Below are positions 1-37,786 of a stretch of DNA of 37,786 bases, piece after piece. Under the pieces are notes generated by a model. The model saw nothing but the letters and a program-made list of their open reading frames with translations. It was not told the DNA's origin and did not search any database. Made by a program: the position numbers and the translations under genes. Position 1 is the stretch's first letter, and the number at the start of each line of letters is the position of its first letter. This DNA is from Ministeria vibrans ATCC 50519 (Eukaryota; Protista; Filasterea): NCBI GenBank assembly GCA_943704425.1, contig CALSCP010000099.1:1-37786 (forward strand), written 5' to 3'.

Positions 1-103
1 CCGAGTGAATGGCTTTTTTTTGTCTGTGGTGACCTCTTTTCGAAAATCTGGATATTCTCAAACGCGAATCAAGGCTGGTTTTCGGTCGACACCATCTGAA
101 TAG

Positions 104-1251
<1,148 letters not shown>

Positions 1252-1626
1252 GCAATCGGTAGTCAATGATGACGCGGGAGGCGCGTATGCCTAAAGAGAG
1301 ATAGTTATAGAGAGGGGAGTGCGAGAGTGCGATGAGAGGGAAGAGAGATTGGAGAGAACCATCTTGAAATTTAAAAAAAAGCATCTTTAAAAAGTTATTC
1401 ACAATCAATCAAGAGGCATTTTGTACCGATCAACGACTACCGAGTGAGGCGTACAAAAAAGTAGCCCAAGTCGTAATTTCTATTTAACTAAGTTATCAGC
1501 GACTCAAGTCTCAAAGCTGTCTCAATAATCAATTCTCATTTCTCAAACAACTTTTTCTTTTCTTACATTTTCCGCTGGCAAGTTGTACCTAATTCGTTAT
1601 TTGCGCTGCAGTGATACCGCGACAGT

Positions 1627-2274
1627 ATGGGAGACGTATTGGAAGCACTAGAGTCGCGATTGGCGCGACTGGAAACGATTTTGTCGGCGGACGAAGGAGA
1701 CACGTCCACAGACAGGTCGCTGACGGAGAGCCTTGCCGCGGGCGTGGCGCATTTGAATGAGGTGTCTCATCGAGAGGCCGCGCAGGCGTCTATGAAGCTG
1801 TGTAGGAAGAAATGCGAAGAGTGCTGCGGTCGGTTTTGGTAACGTTTTGTGCATTGTGGATTCATTTCGTATGGTGTAGGTTCGTCGCTGGAGCCGACGC
1901 TGGATGCGGTGGCGGCACACGAGGCACAGGAGACGCAGGTTCCAGTTGATGCTGAAGTGATGCGGGCGACGGTGACGGCGTGTACGGACGACGTGCGTCA
2001 ACTGACGCGACAGCTGGGGCAGTTGGAGCAGTTGCAATCGTTTGTCAATGTGCCGTCGCTCACCGACGTTGCCGACATGGCCAGCGAAACAGCCGACGTA
2101 GAGGTCAAGACCCTCGATTATGGGCACACGGCGGAAGTGCTTCAGAGGAACGTCACGCAGCTGTTGGCCAACTACGAGCGCACTATGCATCGTGTCTCCA
2201 CGATGTTCACGCAGTGGGATGATCGACTCGCCGCGCTCGAATCTAAGCTGGGCAAAGGCAGTGCCAACAGATAG
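1627..2274 (+). CDS. DCTN3: Dynactin subunit 3 (p22/p24), 189 aa
   Basis: Exons 1627-1801 and 1880-2274 splice in frame. The N-terminal LEALESRLARLE and C-terminal LLANYERTMHRVSTMFTQWDDRLAALE resemble recalled DCTN3 ([27 protein letters not shown]), and the length is similar. Confidence 0.8.
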
Positions 2275-2374
2275 AACGAAGCGAGATCGTATCACATTCA
2301 TTTCCTATTCCAATCTGATCTCATATTACCAACAATGAAACCACACCATGTACACAAAATATGCTTTTAAAGTT

Positions 2375-3509
2375 TCACTGTTTTGGCACTGCAAAGAGTC
2401 GTTCGGTCGCGCGCGAACCAGCAGAGTGGCTCGTAAACACCCAAGCAGGGGTGACAAAGACAACGCGCGGGTGATGCTGGTGAGCCAGGTCAAAGTCAGC
2501 GTCCCACACGCGGCGCGACACAACGTGCGTCGTCGCGTCGCTCATATACGCGTCGACAGCTCCGCCAAACGCCACGATGAGTCGCGTCAGTTGCTTGCGC
2601 TCTCCCGCATCAATCTCGTCGCCAAAATACAACACACGCACACCCTCAAAGAAATTGGGCAATGCAGGCAATGACAACGTCTGGTCGGCGTCAAGATCAG
2701 CGGGAAGCGACGCACTGCAGACTGACGAAGAGTAAGGCGCACTGTTCGCACCTGCGGACTCGCGTAGCACGTTGTTGTTGTTGTTGTCATCGTTGTCGTC
2801 GTTGTCATCGTCGTTGCTGTCGTCCGGGACTACATAGATGGGCTCCTCGTCGGGCACTGTGACATCGCTGGCACATCCGTCGTCCATGGCCGCCGCCTTT
2901 CCTTCCTCCTCCACCACATCATAGTGCGCTGAGCCTTCCATCAGCACTGTGATTTCCGCATCGTCTGGCATGTACGGATCGGGCGGATCCTCGCGATCCT
3001 TCCCATACCCATAGGGCCCCTCCGACACACGCACGCCTGCCCGAGCACACGCGTCAATCCACTCGGCATTGACAATGTAGGCGCGTGGACTGCGCTCGCG
3101 CACCTCAAGGTACTTGGGAGTGCCCGCAAACGCACAGATCAAGTGTGTACAGTCCGGTGACCACCCACCTCGATACGACGCGCCCAGCTTGGTTGCAGTG
3201 TCACGTAACTGTCCTCGCTGTGGATTGACAAAGCCCGAAAGCACAAAGGTGACCAAACTTAAGGGAGCGCTCATACACGCTCGCTTCGCCGACGGTTGTG
3301 GATCGTGTTGACTGTCGTCGCTACAAACGACGCTCGATAGTGACCGTTTGTGTGAAGGGATACAGTCCTGCAAGGATGCAGGGGCAGGGGCACTGGGAGG
3401 AGGTGCTGTAGGTGAGGGATGGACAGGGGTGTGTGACGATGCACGGGCAGGAGCACTGGGAGGAGGTGCTGTAGATGAGAGATGGACAGGGGTGTGTGAC
3501 GATGCATGG
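2375..3509 (-). CDS. XRCC1: XRCC1 C-terminal part (BRCT1, acidic linker, BRCT2); 5' end runs into an assembly gap
   Basis: BRCT1 FVLSGFVNPQRGQLRDTATKLGASYRGGWSPDCTHLICAFAGTPKY and BRCT2 LPALPNFFEGVRVLYFG...IVAFGGAVDAYMSDATTHVV...FVTPAWV match XRCC1 signatures. No XRCC1 N-terminal domain is visible. Confidence 0.9.
3375..3509 (-). repeat. 63-bp coding tandem repeat (21 aa, ASSHTPVHxSxTAPPPSAPAx), at least 2 copies, cut by the gap
   Basis: Units start with gatgca at 3375, 3438 and 3501, a period of 63. Confidence 0.9.
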
Positions 3510-3516
3510 NNNNNNN
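3510..3516. other. Assembly gap (7 N) between a coding tandem repeat and an intronic CT-rich repeat
   Basis: Run of N in the sequence. Confidence 0.99.
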
Positions 3517-3530
3517 AGAGAGAAACAAAG

Positions 3531-3577
<47 letters not shown>

Positions 3578-3677
3578 CAAAGTAATAGAGAGACAAGATG
3601 GATACAAACAAGCATGGAGCCGTGCGTGCGAGAGTGTGGTGGGGGTGTGGGGGTGTTTCTGGTGTGTGTCGACTTAC

Positions 3678-4125
3678 GCAAACATATCCGCCGGATCCAT
3701 AAACACAAAGTCGTGTCCACGGTGCGCATGGTGGCTCTGGGGCATCTGCGCTTGGCCTGTTAAGCCTTCAGCACCGTACGTGTCGTATACACGTCGTTGT
3801 TGCTCTGTGAGTGAAGAAAAGAGAAGACAGAGAGAGAGAGAGAGACAGAGAATGTTCCAGAAAAACCGGTCGAACGAAAGTGATAAAGTACCGTCTGACA
3901 GGACTTGGTACGCCTCGGAGATCTTCTTAAACTTCTCCGCAGCCTAGACAGCAATACACGCAGAGGGTTAGACTAGACAGACAGAGTCGACATAAGCGGG
4001 AAATGTACGTCTGGCGCTGACGATTTGTCTGGATGGTGTCGCAACGCCAGTTTGCGATACGCTTTGCGGATTTCGTCGCCAGTGCACGACCGAGACACTT
4101 GGAGCACTTCGTAGTAGTCCGTCAT
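3678..4125 (-). CDS. DnaJ/Hsp40 (class B-like) 5' exons: J-domain and start of the G/F region; its own 3' part is not in the window
   Basis: Exons 4125-4009, 3943-3892 and 3804-3678 read [71 protein letters not shown]...[12 protein letters not shown]. The HPD motif is intact. The ORF track misses this gene. Confidence 0.9.
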
Positions 4126-4311
4126 GTTAAAACCAAACTATTTTGAGTAGATCGACAGATGACGTCTTTTTATTTTTGAGTGTTATGAGTTGTGTAAATG
4201 ATTGATAAACATTGGATCTTCTCATTGATTGGTGCAGGTGATGAGGTGCTATGATACATAATATTTTGTATTGAAGAGGAAAGGGGGAGGGTTTGTTCAG
4301 AGGAGCGAGAG

Positions 4312-4835
4312 TCAGTCGAAGCACTCTTGAGAGCGACGCACACAGCGCTGGACGGCCTTCTTGAAGTCGGCGGGTTGTTCGCGCATCTGCTTGGCCGCAT
4401 CCAGGTTGGCGGGCGACTCGTCGTTGGGGTCGGATAGCATGAGAATCACCGACAACACAATGGTCTTGACTGTGTGAATGGGAAGCCAGCTGAGACAAAA
4501 AACCGTGCGAGAGGAGAGTGTGTGAGTGGACCAATTCTCTGCTTTTCCGAGGTGGTACCGCTCTTCGGGCTTCTCGTAGCCATACTTGTCCTCGCCAGGC
4601 TCGTGCAGAATTGAAATGCATACATCTCCATCGGGATACACTGAAACACAGACACAAAAACATAACAATCCCCTGTTGAGTGGTCTGTGTGTCGTTGGTA
4701 CCGTTGGGGTGCCAGATATCGGTGAGAAACTTCATGGTGGGTGGTCGCTGAGGGTAGTCGGCAGGAAAGTTCAAGAGGGCCTTGAAGAAGCCGCCTTCAC
4801 TGCGCAACACACACACACACACACATACAGTGACA

Positions 4836-4866
<31 letters not shown>

Positions 4867-5159
4867 AAACGCAAAAGATTAGAGCGGAACGTAACATTCG
4901 ATTGCGTTCACGTACTAGAGCGTGTCTGGAGGACCTGTAATAACCACCTGCCATTTGTACTGCAGGCGAGACGGCGCGACAAGGTCAGGTTTCGAGAGAG
5001 AAGCGAGACACACACACACAAGAAAAAAAAAAAAAGGAGAAACCTTACAACGTCGTCATCGTCCACTAGACCGGCACTGAAGCCTTGGATGGAGTCGTCG
5101 CGGTTGAGCTCTGTTCGTGAGGGGGGGAGGGAGCGGCAGGAGAGTCAGGTGAGGTGGAG

Positions 5160-5199
<40 letters not shown>

Positions 5200-5246
5200 G
5201 AACCAGCAAGTTGTCTTTGCAAGAGAAGCGCCGACTGCTGAGACAT
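4312..5246 (-). CDS. UBE2G1: Ubiquitin-conjugating enzyme E2 G1 (acidic-loop E2), 168 aa
   Basis: Six exons (5246-5204, 5110-5049, 4959-4916, 4799-4702, 4640-4559, 4489-4312) read MSQQSALLLQRQLAEL...[39 protein letters not shown]...SPANLDAAK. Catalytic Cys and HPN are present. Confidence 0.95.
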
Positions 5247-5403
5247 GGAAAAGAGAGACGGCGAAGAGTTAGAAAGAGAGGCTGTATGTAACGTGACGAT
5301 GCACAGAGAAAGATAAGAGTAAATCAATCAATCTGTGATTTTATTCTAATTATTTCTCTTAAGATCTCACTAAATTTGACTAAAATCTGAATTTCTGTCT
5401 GTG
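5247..5403. promoter_or_regulatory. Probable bidirectional promoter region (157 nt) between UBE2G1 and the NUUM-like exon
   Basis: Divergent ATGs at 5246 (-) and 5404 (+), with an AT-rich core at about 5320-5395. Positional inference only. Confidence 0.45.
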
Positions 5404-5455
5404 ATGGGGGGAGGAGCACGATACCCGTACCCTAGATGGGTCTACTCACCGGCCG
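5404..5455 (+). CDS. First exon of a small conserved protein resembling the fungal complex I accessory subunit NUUM (MGGG..YP..V.SPAGGWW family); downstream exons not found
   Basis: The exon reads MGGGARYPYPRWVYSPA(G) and is followed by a canonical G|GTAAG donor. The expected GGWW continuation is absent from 5456-6281. Confidence 0.6.
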
Positions 5456-6071
5456 GTAAGCGTGCGCTCCTAGCGAGGACATCAAGAAACACAAATGCAT
5501 TTTGCTCGTTTGTGTCTCGCGTGGCGTTTCTACTCTGCTGCCCCGCTGTCTATTGGTGCCCCACCCCTCCCCTCCGTCGTCTGTAGTGCGCGCCCTCCAG
5601 TCTGGCATTGCTTTGATGAGAATTTTTCATTTTCGTGATTGTCTCTGATTCGACTTATCGCCTTCGAGTTTCGCTCCCTGTGTGCTTAGCACATGCAGAA
5701 GAACATCCTACGATGAGATGATGGCCCGTGGTATTCGGAGTAGCCGCAAAACGATCGCGAAATAGAAACTTTTGCTTTTTTGCTTTGTTTCTACCTGTAC
5801 GGTCGCACCGGTGCGTTCCACCCGCAGCACAACGTCACTGTTGGGCCGACAGCCTGCAAGAGGCGTGTACATAGTTGCTCAAAGCTTCAGTGTAGCTGAG
5901 AGAGAAATTTGAAGTGATGTCTCAGTTTACAAGCGCATCGCACGCCGGGCCGCAGGGCTGCCGGAGTCTAGAACACTGTGTGATGTGTACTTTGGGCTTG
6001 TGTGGAGTGTTGTCGAACGACCTCTTTTGTTCTTTTTATGCAAGTTCTCATTTTTCTCTGGCTGTCTCTCT

Positions 6072-6245
6072 TTTCTCTCTCTCTCTCTATCACTTTGTTT
6101 CTCTCTCTCTCTCTCTCTATCACTTTGTTTCTCTCTCTCTCTCTATCACTTTGTCTCTCTTTCTCTCTCTTTCTATCACTTTGTTTCTCTCTCTCTCTCT
6201 ATCACTTTGTTTCTCTCTCTCTCTCTCTCTATCACTTTGTTTCTT
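6072..6245 (+). repeat. Intronic minisatellite, 6 units of (CT)n-ATCACTTTGTT
   Basis: TATCACTTTG occurs at about 6088, 6118, 6144, 6174, 6200 and 6230. Related units lie at about 3517-3590 (minus strand) and about 17290-17335. Confidence 0.9.
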
Positions 6246-6281
6246 CCTCCTTTCTCTCTCTCACTCTCTCTCGCTTCCTAG

Positions 6282-6682
6282 TGGATGTCACTCACGCAAA
6301 AGAGGTTCTACGTTTCATTTCGTACGTGGGAAATGATGTCGAGGCAGTCTTTGTTGGCAACGCGCACAAAAGGATATCGGTTGCTTGGACTGTGATACAG
6401 TTGTTGCCCGTACTCGCAGATCCGCGGACTCGCGACCTCGACCCGTTCATTCACGAGACAGTCGTGTCTCTCTTTCAGGTCCTTCAACGTCGATCACTTG
6501 CACTCCTTCGCACTGCTTTTGCTGACCTTGTCGATGTCCTCGCCACTCTCTTGGCCATCGAGAGCGCCTACCGTAACGACACCTCCATCCTTCCCGGTGA
6601 CGCAACCTGGTTTTTCAATTGTGCGCGCCTGGAAGACACTGTCACCACGTTAGCCACATCGAATGATTCGACTTCCTCTGAC

Positions 6683-21226: not shown

Positions 21227-24200
21227 ATGACCCACCAGCTGCTTGGCCGCCTTGTGTTTCTCTCTGCCTTGCTGGCCTTGGCAGACGCTGCCGACCTCTC
21301 CAGTATGAATTGTCATTGTATATTCTCACTCGTTATCCTCAACCTATCCTCCTCCTCCCTCTCCCCCCACCACATTCCCCTCAGGCCTCTCGGCAACGGC
21401 GGTCTTCGTCAGCCCCTTGGGCGGCGTCCAGGGCTCCATTGACTTTGCCCAAACAGTCAACGGGACGAGCGTCAGCGCCACCGTGCGCAACCTACCGGTC
21501 GGCGCTGGCGCTTACCATGTCCATCAACTCCCAATCACTGGCGATTGCTCGACCGCCGGCACTCCTTACAACCCCACAAAGTGAGACAAGAAAATGAAAA
21601 AGTAAATTGACGTGATTTTTTTTTTTTATCTCCCCTCTCGCTCTCTTAGCGTCTCTACCGCTTGCAATGCGTCACTTCCGTCGACGTGCAGCGTTGGAGA
21701 TCTCTCAGGCAAGTTTGGTGTGCTGGAGAACGGCGTGACGCAGTCGTATGTGGACGCGAGTGTGTCGCTTCTCACGCGCGACTCGATTGTGGGGCGCTCG
21801 GTGGTTGTGCACGGGGCGGACGGCGCACCCATCGCATGTGCCACTATTGTCTATGCCAATACCCCTTTGAAGACGGTGGTGGCCACCTTTCCCGTCGGCT
21901 CGCCCCTCGCCGGCACCGTCACCTTGCAACAGCCCGTCGATTACCCCTCTGCACCCACCACCATCCTTGTCGACCTTGCCGCCGCCAACGACTCGTCACT
22001 TGCCTCTCTCGGTCACAAGTGGCACGTGCACGTCAATGCGGTGCAGCTCAGCGACGCTTTGGAGACAACAGCCACGGCGCAGCGCTGTCTCTCTGCCGGC
22101 GGTCACTACAATCCCTTCAATGTCAACACCACCGCACCCGCTTATGCCGCAGGTTGTGCCGCCAACAAGAGCCTTTGCGAGGTTGGGGACGAGTCGGGCT
22201 ACTTTGGTCGACTTGATTTGCCCGCCACGCAGCTTTTCACCGATCCCTATCTGCCGCTGTCGGGCCCCGAGAGCGTCACAGGTCGCTCCATGGTGATTCA
22301 CATTGCGGACGGTGGCGGACCCCGTCTTGCGTGCGCCTCCCTTGTCGAGGCGGTGCCACGCACCCTCACGTCGGTCTTTGCACGCAATGGTGTTTCTGGC
22401 TCGGTCGTAATGTCGCAGCTCAACGCCTGGTCACCCACCATCATCACCGCCTTCGTCGAGGGCGCCGCCGACGCCCCGTACCCCTGGCACATCCATCGCT
22501 TCCCGGTCGTCGACGGCCTGTGCACCGCCGTCGTTGTGGGTGGCCACTACGACCCCTTCGCCGTCAATCACACTGACTACGCCACCGTCTGTTCGCCCTC
22601 GTCGCCCTATCGCTTTTCTGCCTGCGAGCTCGGCGACATCTCGGGTCGCTGGGGTTTGCTCGCGTCCGCCTCTGCCGCCACCTACCTCGACTTTAACACG
22701 CCCCTTTTTGGACGCTACGCCGTGATGGGTCGCAGCATAGTGCTGCACAGCAATGTCGACAACTCGCGTGTCGGCTGCGCGAGCATTGGTTACGAGAGCG
22801 CCCAGGTCGACACCGTCGTCGCTACCTTTACCACACCCATTGTTGGTACCATCACACTTCGTCAGGCTCGCAACCAGCCAGACGCCGAGACTACCATCCT
22901 GGTTGACATTGCCTATCCGGACACGGCCCTGCAGACCTTTGGGCACAAGTGGCACGTGCACGTCAACGCAGTGGGCGACGACGCCGCTGTGCCCAGCCTC
23001 CAGAGCCGCTGTCAGTCAGCCGGTGGCCACTACAACCCGCTCGGCGTCAACGTGTCGTCGCCCGCGTACGCCTCCCTCTGCTCCCCAACCACCCCGCTTG
23101 GCTGTGAACTCGGCGACCTCAAGGGCAAGCATGGCAACATGTCTATTCCCTGGACAGCCGCAAACAAGCGCATGTTTACCGACATCCAACTGCCCCTCAG
23201 CGGCCCTAATTCTGTCTCGGGTCGCTCCATTGTGATTCACACCGACAACGCTGGCGCTCCGCGTCTCGGCTGCGCCACCCTCGCTCCCGTTGTGCCCCGC
23301 ATCGCGCAGGCCGTCTTCTTTACAGGCCCGGTCGCAGGCGTCGTCTCCTTCTCGCAGATGACTTCCGACGACCCCACTATTGTCTCGGTGAGCGTCAGTG
23401 GTCCCGATCAAGACACGGCCCTCATCCTCCATGCTCTTCCTCTTACCGTCGGCGACGGTTCGTGCCCCGCCGCTCAACTAGGCTCCATCTATGACCCGAC
23501 TAATGCCCGTGCAGCCCCCACCAACGCTGCCACCTGTTCAAACGGCTCGCCACCCCCCGCCTACAACGCGGGCTACGGCCTTTGCGCTGTGGGTAACCTG
23601 TACGCCAAGCACGGCGTCTTCACCCCCAGCAACACTGTGCCCACCGTCTGGGCCGACTACAACTCACCGCTGTTTGGCAGCGACTCCATTGTGGGCCGTA
23701 CTCTCGCCGTCCACAACAGAGCGTCGGACGCCATTGCCGCCTGCGCCGTCGTCACATACCTCACGGCGTACACTACTCTGCGCGCTACGTTTGACGACGC
23801 CTCTCCCCTCCGCGGCTCCATTACACTGCGCCAGCCTCGCGATGACCCCACTGCCGAAACCCTTGTATTTGTCGACGTTCGCTACGCCGATCCGAACATG
23901 ACGACCACGACCATTGAGCACAAGTGGCACGTTCACGACTTTGCCGTGTCGCCGCCCGACGATACCTCGTGTCAGTCAGCCGGTGGTCATTACAACCCAC
24001 GCAACGTCAATGCGTCATCGCCTCTGTACGCCACGCTTTGTAGCCCAGCGACGCCTACCGGCTGCGAGCTGGGTGACCTCAGTGGCCGTTTGGGCAACAT
24101 TGCCATTCCCGGCCGCTACATGTACACCGACGTCGATTTGCCGCTCGACGGTGACTTTTCCGTTGCCAACCGTAGCATCACTATTCACGCAGCAAACGCC

Positions 24201-27200
24201 ACGAGCCCTCGCCTTGCATGCGCCACCCTCGACACCCTCGCGCCACGCCGTCTCAGCTCGGTATTTTCCCTGAGCGGCCAGGCCGGTGTGATCGTCGCCG
24301 AACAGACGCTTGTCACCGACCCCACCATTTTGACGTCGACTCTCATTGGCATTCCGGACTCTCCCAACCCTTGGCACATCCACCAGTTTCCCACCCTCGA
24401 CGGCAGCTGCGGTGCCACGCAAGTCGGCGGTCACTACGACCCACTCGACGTCAATCACACCGACTACTCGACGCGCTGTCAGCTCAGCTCGCCAACACGC
24501 TTTCGCGACTGCGAACTCGGCGACATCTCTAACAAGGTTGGCAACCTTGTGTCGGGCACGCCGCAAACATGGTTTGATTTCCACCTGCCTCTCTTTGGAC
24601 GACTTTCTGTCATGGGTCGCAGCTTTGTCATGCATGCAGGTACCACCGGTGCGCGTGTTGGCTGCGCCAACATCGGCTACCCCACCACCGACATCACCAC
24701 GGCAACTGCAAGTTTCCAACTGCCAGACCTTGTGGGCACCATCACGTTGCGTCAGCCGGCCGGCATGCCCGACGCCGAAACTACCATCCTTGTCGACATT
24801 GAGTATGTCAATGCAGCCCTGACCGTGCCCACGTCGGGTCACAAGTGGCATGTGCACACTGACCCGGTTGGCACCGACGCCACCGATGCGACCCTTTCGC
24901 AGCGCTGCCTCTCCGCCGGCGGCCACTACAACCCGCTTCAGGCGAACGTATCGTCCCCGGCGTATGCGACACTCTGCTCGCCGACGACTCCGCTTGCGTG
25001 CGAGCTCGGTGATCTCTCGGGCAAGCATGGGCTCCTCGCTGTACCCTCTACCGGCTCGTCCAAGGTTATGTACACCGATGTGCAGCTGCCTCTGTCAGGC
25101 TCCCTGAGCGTCCTCAATCGCTCCGTTGTGATTCACGCTGCCAACGGCGGTGGACCACGCGTTGCCTGCGCCGACCTTGTTCCGCTGCAACCACGCTCGC
25201 TGAGCGCCTACTTTTTTGGCAACGAGGGCGTCTCCGGCTCGGTCATGTTTACCCAGGCGTACGCCGCCGACCCGACTTTGATCACGCCCTACCTTGTGGG
25301 CTTCACTGGCGCACGTGCATTTAGTCTGCGCGAGTTCCCCGTGGGCGCCCTTGGCGAGTGCACTCTCGACGCCGTTGGAGATGTGTACAACCCAGAGAGT
25401 GTCACTAATGCTAGCTGTGTACCCGGCACGTACACACACGAGGGACTTTGTGCTGTTGGTGATCTCTCCAGCAAGTATGGTACGCTCACCAGCGTCGATG
25501 CGTCCGCGTCGGCACCCAACGGCTACTTCGACTACAGTGTGACGCTGTTTGGACGACGCGCCGTGGTCGGCCGCAGCGTGGTGCTGTCGGCGAACGAGAG
25601 CTTATGGGGCGACTCGATTGCGTGCGGTACCATCGCCTATCCGACCGAGGTGGCACAGACAGTCGTCGTGAGCAGCGTCCAGTCGGCCTCGGGACTTGTT
25701 ACGGGCTCCGTCACACTGCGGAAACTCGACGATGTGCAGTCGACGGTGCACGTGATACTGCACAATGCGGATCCGGCACAGCCCAGCGTGGATCATGGCT
25801 GGGGTGTCTACACGAATGCCCCCAGTGCCGATGGCTCGTGCACCTCGCTTGGCGGTGTCTACGACCCCGTCGGTCTGTTTGGTCTCAGTGGCTGCTCGAC
25901 TGACTCGCCCACGGCGTGTGCGGTTGGTGACCTCACTGGCAAACATGGTCGGCTCTCGGCACCCGCCGGTGCTTCTTCGACACAGTACTTTTTTACCGAC
26001 GAGCAATTGCCGCTCGGTGGCGATTTCTCTGTGCTCACGCGCAGCCTCGTGCTACTCACGGAAAACCAGGGCACACAGGTGAGTTCATGTGCATCAACAA
26101 CGCCACTGGTGGCCCGCACCATCACATCGACGTTCGCCATGAACACCTACTATGGCTCTGTGACGTTGGAGCAGGTAGACGCGCGCTCGCCCACGCGCAT
26201 CACCGTGTCACTCACGGGCGCCGTCCAGACGCCCAACCCATGGCACATTCACAACTTTCCTGTGGTCGATTTCTCGTGCGACGCCAACCAGATTGGCGGA
26301 CACTTCAATCCGTTTGCGGTGGACGCGCAGGCCGTCGACTACTCGACGTTCTGTTCGCCCACCGCACCCACTCGCTTTGGTTCATGCGAGGTGGGCGATC
26401 TCTCGGGTAAGTTTGGTGACCTTGCGGCGAATGCCAACGGCGAATGGTTTGACTATTCGCTGTCGCTGTTTGGGCCCGATGCAGTGGCCGGTCGCAGTGT
26501 GGTGTTGCACAGTGGCACGTTGGGTACGCGTTTGGCGTGCGCATCGCTCGGCTACAATGGTGCCACCGCCGCCGAGCTTGTCACAGCCGTCGCCTACTTT
26601 GACACTGACGACGCGCAAGGCACCATCACCTTCCGTCAGGCTGCCAATGATCCCTTGGCGCCCACCACTGTTTTCCTTGATCTTTGGACATCACAGAACT
26701 TTGAGGCGCCCGGCGTCTCGTGGCATGTGCACTCGAATGCGGTGGGCGCCGACGCCGACGCGCTTCTCTCGTCCGGCAATCGCTGCCAGTCGGTCGGTGG
26801 CCACTACAACCCGAGCGGCGTGGATACGTCAAATGCGGCTGCGTATGCGGCTGCGTGCTCTCCGTCGACACCCAATGCGTGCGAGGTAGGCGATCTCACC
26901 GGCAAGTCGGAGCCTGTCGTGCTACCAGCACTTGGTGCCTCCAAACTCCTCTACTCCATTGGCAACTTGCCACTGTCGGGCTCGGAGAGCATTGTCATGC
27001 GCTCCGTTGTTATCCACCTGCCTGGAAGCTCGGCGCGCTTTGCGTGTGCCACCATCACGCAGCTGACCGCCCGCGAAGTTACGGCGCAGGTAAACATGGG
27101 CGGTGTGTCGGGGACTATTACATTTTCGCAGGTGTACCTCACCGACCCGGTGACGATTGACGTGGACGTGCGCGACCTGTCGGGTGGCCCCAATCCGTGG

Positions 27201-29831
27201 TACATGCGTACGCTTCCCTCTATCGATGACAACACGGGCACCAACGTAGCGTCACCCACCGACTGCCCTTCGGTACTCTACGATCCTTTTGGCCGCCGGT
27301 CCGCCGCCGACTACGACACAGCGTGCACGAGTACCGCTCCGTCACGCTGGGCTGCATGTGCCGCCGGAGACTTTGTCAACAAATTTGGCACTCTTCCTCC
27401 CAATGGCATCATGACGGGTCTCAGCGACCCGACCATATCGCTCTTTGGCCGTCATGCCATTTCGCGACGCTCAGTCCACATCACCATGTCGGCTGCAAAT
27501 ACATTCGCGTCGCTCGCCTGCGGCACCGTTGGCTTCTTTGGCTCGCCAACCACGGTCACGGCAAGCTTCGTGTGGCCTGTGCGCGGTTGGATTACCCTGC
27601 GCCAGGTGGCCGCGTCGCCCTTCTCGTCAACTACAGTCGAATGGAGTCTCGCTCAGGCGAATGCCACGCTGGGCACCACGTCGGGCCACAACTGGCACGT
27701 CCACATGGATCCGGTTGGGTCTGACGGTAGTCAGCACAGTTCGCTTGCCGACCGGTGTCAGTCGACGGGTGCTCACTATGACCCGACTGCGCGTGCCACG
27801 GCCGACGTCGGTGCCTACGACTGTGATGCCGCCGCTCCCTTTGCCACATGCGAAATTGGCGATGAAAGTGGCAAACTTGGTTCGCTCAGTGTGTCCACGT
27901 TGCTCTCAAGCCGACAGCTTCTGGTCGACGCAAGCCTGCCGCTGGCCGGTGCGCTCAGCGTCGCCGGACGCTCGATTGTCATCCATGGTGCCGCTGGTGT
28001 TGCCCAACGTCTCGCGTGCGCCACCCTCCAGGTGCAGGAGACTCGCGTGCTCAAAGCAACGTTGGGCACTGGCTCGCAGGGCGTGTCGGGCAGCGTGACT
28101 TTGTCGCAGGACTACGAGGGTGCCCACACCACGGCGAGCGTGTCGGTGACAGGTTTGCCTGCGGGCGGTGCCAAGTGGTACGTCCAGTCGCTGCCGGTCG
28201 CGTCTGGTGCCTCCGTGTGCGATGCAGCCGCCGTTGGCGACGTGTACAATCCTGCCGCCGTGAGCACGACCGAACCGGCGTACAGCACAGACTGCACGCT
28301 CACCTCACGCATTCGTCAGCAGGCCTGTCGTCAGGGTGATCTTGCTGGCCGCCTTGGGTCCCTGACACAGTCAGTGAGTAGCTTCGACGTGGCCGCCTTT
28401 GTGCTGCCGCTGTTTGGCCGGCAGAGTGTACAGGGCCGTTCCATTGTGCTCACGGACGCATCCACGGACGCTCCACTTGCGTGCGGTACGCTTGAGCGCG
28501 AAGGAGCAACCGTCGTGACGGGCACGGTGGCCTTTAGCTCGGGGCAGTTGCGCGGGACCATTATCATGACGCAGGAACTCGGCGTGCCCAATGGCGACAC
28601 GACACTCGTGGTGGACGTCGGCATTGCGTCGCGTCGTCGCGCCGCCGCTGTGTCAGGCAGCGCCTACAGCTGGGGTGTGCGCGACGGGGCAGCTTCGTCG
28701 GGCGGATGCAACGCATTGGCAACCGCGTTCAACCCAACCGGCGCGTCTACGTCGGGCTGTTCCGCCAGCACACCCAATCTTTGTGCCATGGGTGACCTTT
28801 CGGGAAAGTTTGGTCTGCTGACACTGCCCGCCACGGCAGCTCAGCGCCAAGTGTTCACCGACTCGACTTTGCCATTGCAGGGCCCCTTCTCGGTGAAGGA
28901 CCAGTCGATGAGCGTTGCGTCGCCGACCAATTCGTCTGACCCGGTTGCTTGCACTGCCTTGACCACGGACTACACCGAAGAGACGCCTCCCGACCCGAAT
29001 ATCGGTGGCTCCGGCGGTGGCTCCTCCTCGGGCGGCATCATTGCCGGTGTAATTATCGGTCTCATTCTGCTCGTTTTGATTGTCATCTTCTTTGTGGTTC
29101 GACGCAAGCGCTCGCAGCGCACCAAGTACGTGACGCAGTCGTACACGGCGTCGGTCGCGTCCAATGCCGCGCCCGTCGGTCACAACCCTATCTACGATTC
29201 GCGGGCCGCACCCACTGTTGCACCCACTGCCTCTGCTGCTGCGCCCGCGCCGCGCACGGGTCCGCGTCCAGAACGATACCGTGCGCTCTATGCGTACACT
29301 GCCAATGCAGTGGACGAGCTTGAATTGCAGGCGGGCGACGAGGTCGACGTAACTTCGCAGCAAGCCGACGGCTGGTACGTAGGCAAGAATCTGCGCACGC
29401 GCAAGTCGGGCATCTGTCCCGGAAACTATCTGGAGAAGTCAGCGAACTCGACAAGCCAACTGCAGGCTGGCGTGCAGGCGGCCGACGCTCGAATTGCTTC
29501 GCTCCAGCAGCAACAGCGAAGCAAAGCGCCCTCGCGGCCCACCTCAGGCCACATCTACGATTCGGTGCCCCGCCAACCGCGTAAGTCCGCGCCAGTCCCG
29601 CGCAACCCAAGTGTCGGTAACGCACGCCCCCCGTCGCGCCCCACCTCGTCAGCTACGGGCGCTCCGCCACGCCCCGCCCCACGCCCGTCATCCGTCACCT
29701 CCGCCGCCCCGGCCCTCCCTGCGCCTCGTTCCAGCTCCACCACCACGACCGGCCCTGCTAAGCCTCCGCGTGCTCCCTCGACTAACCCACCTGCGCGTCC
29801 TCCGCGTCCCGCTTCCCGTCCCGTGCAATAA
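21227..29831 (+). CDS. Type I membrane protein of about 2817 aa: signal peptide, 16 Cu-only SOD-like repeats (CSRP-like), TM helix, SH3 and Pro-rich tail
   Basis: Exons 21227-21302, 21385-21580 and 21650-29831 splice in frame (8454 nt). Signal peptide MTHQLLGRLVFLSALLALADA. 16 repeats follow the pattern WHxH...C..GGHYNP...C...CE(V/L)GDLSGK.G...GRS.VIH...R.ACA. TM at 29037-29099 (IIAGVIIGLILLVLIVIFFVV followed by RRKR). SH3 at 29271-29438. Confidence 0.93.
29271..29438 (+). other. SH3 domain in the cytoplasmic tail of the SOD-repeat protein
   Basis: YRALYAYTANAVDELELQAGDEVDV...DGWYVG...SGICPGNYLEK carries the ALYxY, ELxLxxGD, GW and PxNY signatures. Confidence 0.93.
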
Positions 29832-29937: not shown

Positions 29938-37710
<7,773 letters not shown>

Positions 37711-37786
37711 CTGCACACACACAACAGAGACAAGTGTTAAAAACGACACTCGATCACTTTCTTCATTTTTTTTTTTTTTTTTTTTA

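What the first reader, a model, noticed from the sequence alone, without database searches (positions are those of the whole stretch)
21227..29831. Receptor-like protein with 16 tandem Cu-only SOD domains, a TM helix and an intracellular SH3 signalling tail
Seen: signal peptide, 16 SOD-fold repeats of about 155 aa, one TM helix with an RRKR stop-transfer, and a cytoplasmic tail of about 243 aa containing SH3. Known: Cu-only SODs (Candida SOD5 type) lack two Zn-ligand His and the electrostatic loop, and carry ExxD (E110/D113). Cu-only SOD repeat proteins (CSRP) of animals and Capsaspora are described as four-domain, secreted or GPI-anchored proteins. These repeats fit the Cu-only pattern, but there are four times as many and they are joined to a signalling tail. 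I do not know of this architecture being described. Inference: a surface antenna that dismutates or senses extracellular superoxide (or binds Cu or ligands) and couples this to tyrosine-kinase or cytoskeletal signalling.
Basis: partly seen in the sequence, partly recalled or inferred. Interest (0 to 1): 0.92.

Follow-up and report, generated by a model that had tools for sequence, protein, structure and literature searches.

The report
Transmembrane 16-repeat copper-only SOD protein
This is a real gene of a single-celled relative of animals: a cell-surface protein with 16 copper-only superoxide dismutase domains in a row (9 look active, 7 are dead copies), held in the membrane and ending inside the cell in an SH3 adaptor domain. 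The same layout exists, unremarked, in the published Capsaspora protein of this family, which papers describe only as secreted or lipid-anchored.

Summary
A three-exon gene (21227-29831, +) encodes a signal peptide, 16 SOD-fold domains, one transmembrane helix followed by RRKR, and a 243-residue tail with an SH3 domain and a proline-rich end.

Nine domains keep all four Cu histidines together with E110, D113 and the catalytic Arg. Seven have lost them. All 16 lack the Zn histidines and the long loop VII, so they are the Cu-only (SOD5/CSRP) type.

The architecture is not unprecedented:
- Capsaspora CAOG_08503, the published "12-repeat" CSRP, has the same SOD(n)-TM-SH3 layout, and its SH3 is 52% identical.
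- This genome holds two further paralogues with it. One is collinear domain by domain over 16 domains.
- An unnamed eukaryotic transcript also has it.

The CSRP papers I could read call the family secreted or GPI-anchored and mention neither the helix nor the SH3.

My best reading is a type I membrane CSRP: an extracellular SOD array whose vinexin/p47phox-like SH3 tail positions it at the cell cortex. Sensing or signalling is untested.

I could not get RNA evidence for splicing.

The parts
21227..21302 (+). Exon 1: start codon and signal peptide (25 codons plus 1 base)
   Evidence: Read from the sequence. Hydrophobic core LVFLSALLALA followed by ADA.
21303..21384 (+). Intron 1 (GT..AG, 82 nt)
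   Evidence: There is an in-frame TGA right after the donor, and a pyrimidine tract before the CAG.
21385..21580 (+). Exon 2: N-terminal half of SOD domain 1 (YHVH present; the bridging His is replaced by Pro)
   Evidence: Pfam Sod_Cu E 1.6e-7, profile positions 1-56. Domain-model positions 4-75.
21581..21649 (+). Intron 2 (GT..AG, 69 nt, T-rich)
   Evidence: Pfam aligns across it with 1 TGA and 1 TAA inside.
21650..28973 (+). First part of exon 3: C-terminal half of domain 1, then domains 2-16. Domain starts: D2 21861, D3 22356, D4 22800, D5 23295, D6 23766, D7 24243, D8 24687, D9 25191, D10 25647, D11 26112, D12 26562, D13 27069, D14 27543, D15 28041, D16 28506. D2, 3, 4, 6, 7, 8, 11, 12 and 14 have a complete Cu site. 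D1 has 3 of 4 His and D5 has 2 of 4. D9, 10, 13, 15 and 16 have none.
   Evidence: AF2 models: D3-D4 pLDDT 90, D15-D16 pLDDT 85. Both models hit SOD5 and Cu/Zn SODs.
28974..29036 (+). Short Gly/Ser-rich stalk between domain 16 and the membrane
29037..29111 (+). Transmembrane helix IIAGVIIGLILLVLIVIFFVV plus RRKR stop-transfer
   Evidence: The only window of 19 residues with Kyte-Doolittle mean above 1.8 in the exon 3 protein (maximum 3.47).
29280..29438 (+). SH3 domain, vinexin/SORBS SH3-3 and p47phox SH3-B type
   Evidence: Pfam SH3_1 E 1.5e-10. PDB hits: vinexin 2ct3 E 1.6e-14, SORBS1, p47phox 3e-12. 52% identical to the Capsaspora tail SH3.
29520..29831 (+). Proline/serine/arginine-rich C-terminal tail with three PxxPx[RK] motifs, and the stop codon
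   Evidence: 22% Pro; PRQPRK, PAKPPR, PARPPR.

Best explanation
The gene encodes a type I membrane member of the Cu-only SOD repeat protein (CSRP) family in a filasterean protist.

Shown by sequence:
- A signal peptide directs the N-terminus out of the cell.
- Sixteen tightly linked SOD barrels form the ectodomain, each with four cysteines.
- Nine barrels have the full Cu-only catalytic set: four His, E110, D113 and the Arg. Seven have lost all of it but are conserved as folds.
- One helix spans the membrane.
- The tail carries one SH3 domain of the vinexin/p47phox type and a proline-rich end.

Inferred:
- The nine intact domains dismutate extracellular superoxide to H2O2 at the cell surface, as shown for an oyster CSRP.
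- The dead domains act as spacers or folding partners.
- In place of the GPI anchor of animal CSRPs, the TM helix and SH3/proline-rich tail tie the array to cortical proteins (actin, adhesion or endocytic machinery, possibly the NADPH oxidase complex). This would control where on the surface the array sits.
For: Domain content and topology.

Active sites. In every domain of four related proteins, the four Cu His co-occur strictly with E110, D113 and Arg143, and all are lost together in the other domains. The Zn His are absent and loop VII is short, as in SOD5.

Fold. SOD5 gives the best per-domain structural match, TMt 0.78 and rmsd 2.5-2.8, for both an intact and a dead domain pair. pTM of 0.88 and 0.84 points to rigid pairs.

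The layout is inherited, not accidental:
- The same SOD(n)-TM-SH3 layout occurs in Capsaspora CAOG_08503, two paralogues here and transcript P0006.
- Within this genome, the SH3's closest relatives are exactly the two paralogues' SH3 domains.
- The domain tree pairs window Di with C1788 Di at about 100% support. It splits odd and even domain types before the split from Capsaspora.

Biochemistry from the literature. A recombinant oyster CSRP dismutates superoxide (PMC13017621).

Source of substrate. The genome has p22phox and several NOX-type loci, so a surface superoxide source exists.
Against:
- No measurement of Cu binding or SOD activity.
- Seven of 16 domains here and 12 of 16 in the collinear paralogue are catalytically dead, so catalysis may not be the main selected function.
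- The SH3 partner is unknown. The test of SH3 against its own proline-rich tail gave no verdict.
Confidence: 0.6

Rival explanations
1. Adhesion or structural protein. The SOD barrels are used mainly as Ig-like building blocks of a long surface rod that binds matrix, prey or other cells. The SH3 tail links that rod to the cytoskeleton, and catalysis is secondary or vestigial.
For: Seven dead domains here and 12 of 16 in the collinear paralogue C1788. The dead domains are as well conserved between the paralogues as the live ones: raw scores 320-405 against 360-451. They still fold as SOD barrels. The SH3 is closest to the focal-adhesion adaptors vinexin and SORBS1.
Against: Nine domains keep every catalytic residue, with strict co-variation. 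That pattern implies selection on Cu chemistry. In the C486 paralogue the last seven domains are all intact.
Confidence: 0.2
2. Redox sensor or receptor. Superoxide, Cu or another ligand changes the ectodomain, and this is passed through the membrane to SH3 and phosphotyrosine signalling.
For: Receptor-like topology. The tail has an SH3, PxxP motifs and tyrosines in NPIY and HIYDSV contexts.
Against: No kinase or other enzymatic domain in the tail. The Tyr motifs are not conserved in the paralogues or in Capsaspora. There is no known way for a rigid chain of SOD barrels to signal across a single helix. No data on ligand binding.
Confidence: 0.12
3. Gene-model artefact. The SOD array and the TM/SH3 tail belong to different transcripts or to a mis-assembled contig, so the fusion is not real.
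For: No RNA data could be obtained. The window's own protein was not returned from the protein database.
Against: - There is one uninterrupted frame from domain 1b to the stop.
- The repeats are old and diverged, at most 88% DNA identity over about 40 nt.
- The same junction (last SOD domain, TM, SH3) occurs in two paralogues, in Capsaspora, and in an independent metagenome scaffold (P0013, near-identical to the C-terminus of the C1788 paralogue: its last SOD domain, TM and SH3).
- It also occurs in a 6.6-kb single-ORF contig, P0006, which I take for an mRNA because members of its cluster lie as short pieces on large genomic contigs.
Confidence: 0.04

Closest known systems
Capsaspora owczarzaki CSRP CAOG_08503 (XP_011270085.1 / A0A0D2X116)
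   Same: - Tandem Cu-only SOD domains alternating between the same two types, ending in the long type before the membrane.
- A short stalk, one TM helix and an RRRR stop-transfer.
- An SH3 52% identical to this one, followed by a proline-rich end.
- It is the closest named protein (37% identity).
   Different: - The record is N-terminally partial, with 11 full domains and one fragment. The review counts 12 repeats, nine of them intact.
- Only one clearly dead domain, against seven here.
- Its domains do not pair position by position with those of this protein.
- The papers I read do not mention its TM helix or SH3.
Animal CSRPs (oyster CSRP, fish cusr, amphibian SOD4)
   Same: Signal peptide; tandem Cu-only SOD-like barrels with very short linkers; a mix of Cu-binding and Cu-less repeats, with the N-terminal repeat lacking the Cu site; extracellular (PMC13017621; hits P0002-P0005).
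   Different: They are described as having 4-6 repeats and as GPI-anchored or secreted. This protein has 16 repeats, a TM helix and a 243-aa cytoplasmic tail with an SH3. None of the animal hits carried an SH3.
Candida albicans SOD5 (Cu-only SOD, PDB 4N3T)
   Same: Four Cu His; E110/D113 ('EVGDLAGKHGN' against 'ELGDLKGKHGN'); no Zn site; truncated loop VII; conserved Arg and disulfide. It is the best structural match.
   Different: A single domain of about 25 kDa, GPI-anchored to the fungal wall, not repeated, with no cytoplasmic part.
SH3-3 of vinexin/SORBS1 and SH3-B of p47phox
   Same: The tail SH3 is about 55% identical to vinexin SH3-3, including the 'RT(K/Q)K' distal-loop stretch, and scores 48-50 bits with p47phox SH3-B. 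The ALYxY, W and PxNY binding residues are intact.
   Different: Those are soluble multi-SH3 adaptors. Here a single SH3 is fixed to a membrane protein. No SoHo or PX domain is present.
Single-pass or multi-pass membrane proteins with cytoplasmic SH3 (yeast Fus1, Sho1; recalled from memory, not tested) and the unnamed TM + multi-SH3 proteins P0014, P0056, P0091
   Same: An ectodomain, a TM helix, a basic stop-transfer and cytoplasmic SH3 domain(s).
   Different: Their ectodomains are unrelated Cys-rich or mucin-like regions with no SOD domains.

Membership tests
Cu-only SOD / CSRP | [quoted passage not shown] | tested here: met
   Pfam Sod_Cu E 2e-121. AF2 pLDDT 90 and 85. Foldseek hits SODs with probability 1.00.
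Cu-only SOD / CSRP | Four Cu-ligand histidines (H46, H48, H63, H120 in SOD1 numbering) | tested here: met
   Met in 9 of 16 domains. D1 has 3 of 4, D5 has 2 of 4, and five domains have none. CSRPs are defined as a mix of Cu-binding and Cu-less repeats.
Cu-only SOD / CSRP | Loss of Zn ligands H71/H80, with E110/D113 in their place | tested here: met
   E and D are present in all nine intact domains. The alignments to SOD5 and to plant Cu/Zn SOD show H80 replaced by E and no His at the H71 position.
Cu-only SOD / CSRP | Truncated electrostatic loop VII | tested here: met
   10-12 residues between the last Cu His and the C-terminal Cys, as in SOD5.
Cu-only SOD / CSRP | Conserved intramolecular disulfide cysteines | tested here: met
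   The C146 equivalent is present in all 15 domains tabulated and, in D1, in the alignment. There are 64 ectodomain Cys, four per domain. Actual disulfide pairing was not measured.
Cu-only SOD / CSRP | Tandem repeats on one polypeptide with very short linkers, and an N-terminal secretion signal | tested here: met
   16 contiguous domains without spacers. Signal peptide in exon 1.
Cu-only SOD / CSRP | GPI-anchored or secreted, with no cytoplasmic part (as described in the reviews) | tested here: not met
   TM helix, RRKR and a 243-aa tail with an SH3. The published Capsaspora member fails this feature in the same way, so the description is too narrow; it does not make this protein an outsider.
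Cu-only SOD / CSRP | Cu binding and superoxide dismutase activity | not testable with these tools
   Needs expressed protein, ICP-MS and an activity assay.
Bimetallic Cu/Zn SOD (SOD1/SOD3 type) | Zn site (H63, H71, H80, D83) and full-length loop VII | tested here: not met
SH3 domain | Profile match with intact ALYxY, Trp and PxNY ligand-groove residues | tested here: met
   SH3_1 40.9 bits against a cut-off of 22.9. 244 PDB SH3 chains hit at E<=0.01. The residues are visible.
Receptor with an enzymatic signalling tail (e.g. receptor tyrosine kinase) | Cytoplasmic kinase or other catalytic domain | tested here: not met
   Only an SH3 is found in the tail.

The most novel reading that the evidence does not exclude
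The ancestral CSRP of the animal lineage was a transmembrane protein, not a secreted enzyme. Its SH3 tail would dock the extracellular SOD array onto a proline-rich cortical partner. The most interesting candidate is the p22phox subunit of NADPH oxidase, which this genome has, with a PRR 'APTRPPPR'. Superoxide made by NOX would then be turned into the signalling molecule H2O2 at its source. Animals would later have lost the tail in favour of GPI anchoring or secretion.
Probability: 0.1. Interest if true: 0.8.

Novelty: new variant of a known kind. Interest (0 to 1): 0.5.

Why it matters
CSRPs are a recently named family whose function the field itself calls enigmatic. Reviews state that they are exclusively secreted or GPI-anchored and that the largest has 12 repeats.

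This protein has 16 repeats, and a second 16-repeat paralogue lies in the same genome. More usefully, the filasterean members, including the published Capsaspora one, turn out to be type I membrane proteins with a conserved SH3 tail.

That tail gives an experimental handle. Pull-downs and tail deletions in Capsaspora, which can be transfected, could show what a surface SOD array is connected to inside the cell. It also bears on how extracellular ROS handling was wired in the unicellular relatives of animals.

The fixed pattern of live and dead domains, conserved across a gene duplication, is a clean case for studying pseudo-enzyme domains within a repeat protein.

Tried and rejected
- The search for homologous proteins with domain 16 + TM + tail (441 aa) found nothing at E<=0.01.
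- The profile search with TM + SH3 over 1.84 billion representatives was swamped by multi-SH3 proteins. Only P0013 among the best 150 also has a SOD domain. This search therefore does not measure how widespread the architecture is.
- Complex prediction of the SH3 against the protein's own proline-rich tail gave no answer (score 0.02, controls not run). This is evidence neither for nor against binding.
- SH3 against the p22phox tail was not run.
- The ESM Atlas look-up gave only a weak Sod_Cu cluster (0.76).
- Paper searches for CAOG_08503, SRR8466183 and Sod_Cu + SH3 + Capsaspora found nothing relevant. PMC5880121, the 2018 CSRP paper, is not held.
- Assembly expansion of near-identical repeats was considered and rejected.
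- A bimetallic Cu/Zn SOD was considered and rejected.
- The organism of transcript P0006 could not be identified.
- I did not verify the name Ministeria vibrans given by earlier agents. What I can say is that the closest named relative is Capsaspora, a filasterean.


Full report
**What is there**

The region 21227-29831 (+) holds a three-exon eukaryotic gene.
- Exon 1 (21227-21302) starts with ATG and encodes MTHQLLGRLVFLSALLALADAADLS, a standard signal peptide.
- Two short GT..AG introns follow the first two exons (21303-21384 and 21581-21649). Each has a pyrimidine tract and in-frame stops.
- Exon 2 is 21385-21580.
- Exon 3 (21650-29831) is a single open frame of 8.2 kb.

All searches used exon pieces by reference, and domain 1 was judged as two halves.

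Homology supports the splice model. Exon 2 matches positions 4-75 of the domain model and the first 70 residues of exon 3 match positions 84-156. Pfam Sod_Cu aligns straight through intron 2.

**Domains**

- Pfam finds Sod_Cu at E 2e-121 on exon 3 and 1.6e-7 on exon 2, and SH3_1 at 1.5e-10.
- Sixteen 'CxxGD' anchors define 16 domains of 148-169 aa with essentially no linkers.
- Pfam alone reports 12 of the 16.
- The other four (D5, D10, D13, D16) are recognised by their alignment to the rest and by pairwise scores.
- A model of the most degenerate pair, D15-D16, folds confidently as two SOD barrels: pLDDT 85, pTM 0.84, with SOD5 as the top single-domain hit.
- The intact pair D3-D4 gives pLDDT 90 and pTM 0.88. 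SOD5 is again the best per-domain match (TMt 0.78, rmsd 2.5), ahead of the bimetallic SODs at 0.68-0.74.

**Cu-only character**

The sequence alignment to SOD5 shows 'ELGDLKGKHGN' against 'EVGDLAGKHGN'. It also shows the short 'xRLxC' end that replaces the long electrostatic loop. The alignment to a plant Cu/Zn SOD shows the Zn histidines missing.

A column table of all domains gives the following.
- D2, 3, 4, 6, 7, 8, 11, 12 and 14 have all four Cu histidines, and with them always E110, D113 and the catalytic Arg.
- D1 has three His and lacks E110 and the Arg (read directly).
- D5 has two His.
- D9, 10, 13, 15 and 16 have none, and have lost the Glu and the Arg as well.
- The ectodomain has 64 cysteines, four per domain, and exon 3 holds 19 N-glycosylation sequons.

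Only nine can be enzymes.

**Membrane and tail**

Only one segment in 2726 residues is hydrophobic enough for a membrane helix: IIAGVIIGLILLVLIVIFFVV, followed by RRKR. The tail behind it is 243 aa.

The SH3 has intact groove residues. It is closest to vinexin SH3-3 (E 1.6e-14, about 55% identity), SORBS1, and the second SH3 of p47phox (3e-12).

After the SH3 comes a 22%-proline tail with three PxxPx[RK] motifs.

The NPIY and HIYDSV motifs noted by first-stage readers are not conserved in the paralogues or in Capsaspora. The helix, the basic stop-transfer and the SH3 are conserved.

**Relatives**

The closest named protein is Capsaspora owczarzaki CAOG_08503 (37% identity). [quoted passage not shown]

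Its sequence ends in a stalk, a TM helix, RRRR, an SH3 52% identical to this one, and a proline-rich tail. The architecture is therefore already in the public record.

However, the review and the oyster paper describe CSRPs as GPI-anchored or secreted. They never use the words transmembrane or SH3. I found no paper that mentions CAOG_08503 or this domain combination.

**A gene family in this genome**

The genome is 29.7 Mb in 2860 contigs. Earlier agents of this scan call it Ministeria vibrans; I did not test that name. A Pfam scan of the genome finds further multi-SOD loci:
- C1788: 16 domains + TM + SH3.
- C486: at least 14 domains, the last seven all intact, + TM + a Cys-rich juxtamembrane stretch + SH3 + a long proline-rich tail.
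- C540: at least 8 domains + TM and a short tail without SH3.
- C1412: a further locus at a contig edge.

These descriptions rest.

Within the genome, the nearest relatives of this SH3 are exactly the SH3 domains of C1788 and C486 (52% and 50% identity). The next hit is far weaker.

The last twelve domains of C1788 find window D5 to D16 as best matches, in strict order. In a maximum-likelihood tree, window Di pairs with C1788 Di at about 100% support for ten positions. A 16-domain, TM-SH3 ancestor therefore predates that duplication.

The tree also splits all domains into two clades (100/99 support), the odd (short) and even (long) types. Each clade contains Capsaspora domains, so the two-domain unit is older than the split of the two filastereans.

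The dead positions D5, D9, D10, D13, D15 and D16 are dead in both paralogues. They are as conserved as the live ones, which argues that they are kept for a reason.

**Outside Filasterea**

One further SOD + TM + SH3 protein turned up: P0006, from a 6.6-kb single-ORF contig assembled from run SRR8466183. I take the contig for an mRNA. It encodes a signal peptide, three intact and one dead SOD domain, a Ser/Thr-rich stalk, a TM helix and four SH3 domains. I could not identify its organism.

No animal CSRP hit carried an SH3.

**How it most likely works**

Shown: the topology, the domain types and the live/dead pattern.

Inferred: the nine intact domains dismutate extracellular superoxide, as a recombinant oyster CSRP does (review). 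The dead domains serve as spacers or folding partners. The TM-SH3-proline tail replaces a lipid anchor and ties the array to cortical proteins.

The genome encodes p22phox with a proline-rich stretch and several NOX-type loci, so a surface source of superoxide exists. A direct SH3-p22phox link is only a speculation. I could not test it without joining exons. The test of the SH3 against its own tail gave no verdict.

Rivals:
- An adhesion or structural rod built from SOD barrels. The many conserved dead domains and the vinexin-like SH3 favour this.
- A true sensor. Nothing supports this yet.
- A gene-model artefact. This is unlikely given the continuous frame, the diverged repeats and four independent occurrences of the same junction.

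**Verdict**

It is a new, record-size member of the CSRP family. It brings out a membrane-spanning, SH3-tailed variant of that family that the literature I could search has overlooked. The variant is not unique to this gene and is already present in a database entry. Interest is moderate.

Noticed in passing
window 30769-37749 (-): A 2326-aa open frame with PI4K_N, PIK and PI3_PI4_kinase domains: a PI4KA-type lipid kinase gene lying tail to tail with the SOD gene.
   Followed up: partly
L013/L017 (G000:C486:45500-54500): A paralogue with at least 14 SOD domains, interrupted by introns or frame changes inside domains. Its last seven domains are all intact. Just after its TM helix it has a Cys-rich stretch 'CCCNSCRCCPC' that looks like a palmitoylation cluster, then an SH3 and a very long proline-rich tail.
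   Followed up: partly
L014/L018 (G000:C1788:69100-77800): A collinear 16-domain paralogue in which only D3, D6, D7 and D8 keep the Cu site. Its first domains are split by several introns, unlike the window gene.
   Followed up: partly
L015 (G000:C540:1080-5327, -) and L016 (G000:C1412:1-2000, -): Two more multi-SOD-domain genes. C540 has at least 8 domains (one intact among the last six), a TM helix and a short tail without SH3. C1412 runs off the contig start.
   Followed up: partly
L020:1405-2103 (G000:C1139): A p22phox (Cytochrom_B558a, 85 bits) homologue with a proline-rich stretch 'APTRPPPR'. A probable 82-nt GT..AG intron follows directly after it.
   Followed up: partly
L019 (Logan SRR8466183 contig, gene 88-6441): Transcript of an unidentified, AT-rich eukaryote encoding a signal peptide, 3 intact + 1 dead Cu-only SOD domains, a mucin-like stalk, a TM helix and four SH3 domains. 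Members of its protein cluster lie as short pieces on ENA contigs up to 2.2 Mb, as expected for exons.
   Followed up: partly
L025 (ENA ERZ23497041 scaffold_12286, gene 586-1608): A metagenome scaffold (SAMN09406010) encodes a protein nearly identical to the C-terminus of the C1788 paralogue (last SOD domain + TM + SH3). This organism, or a very close one, is therefore present in that sample.
   Followed up: no
P0014, P0056, P0091: Unnamed proteins with a Cys-rich ectodomain, one TM helix and three to five cytoplasmic SH3 domains. They are another class of single-pass SH3-tailed membrane proteins and have no SOD domains.
   Followed up: no
P0002-P0004 (fish cusr proteins): Fish 'cusr' proteins of about 1900 aa show two blocks of four clear SOD domains each, with weak extra matches before each block. 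That is more repeats than the six the review gives for most animals.
   Followed up: no
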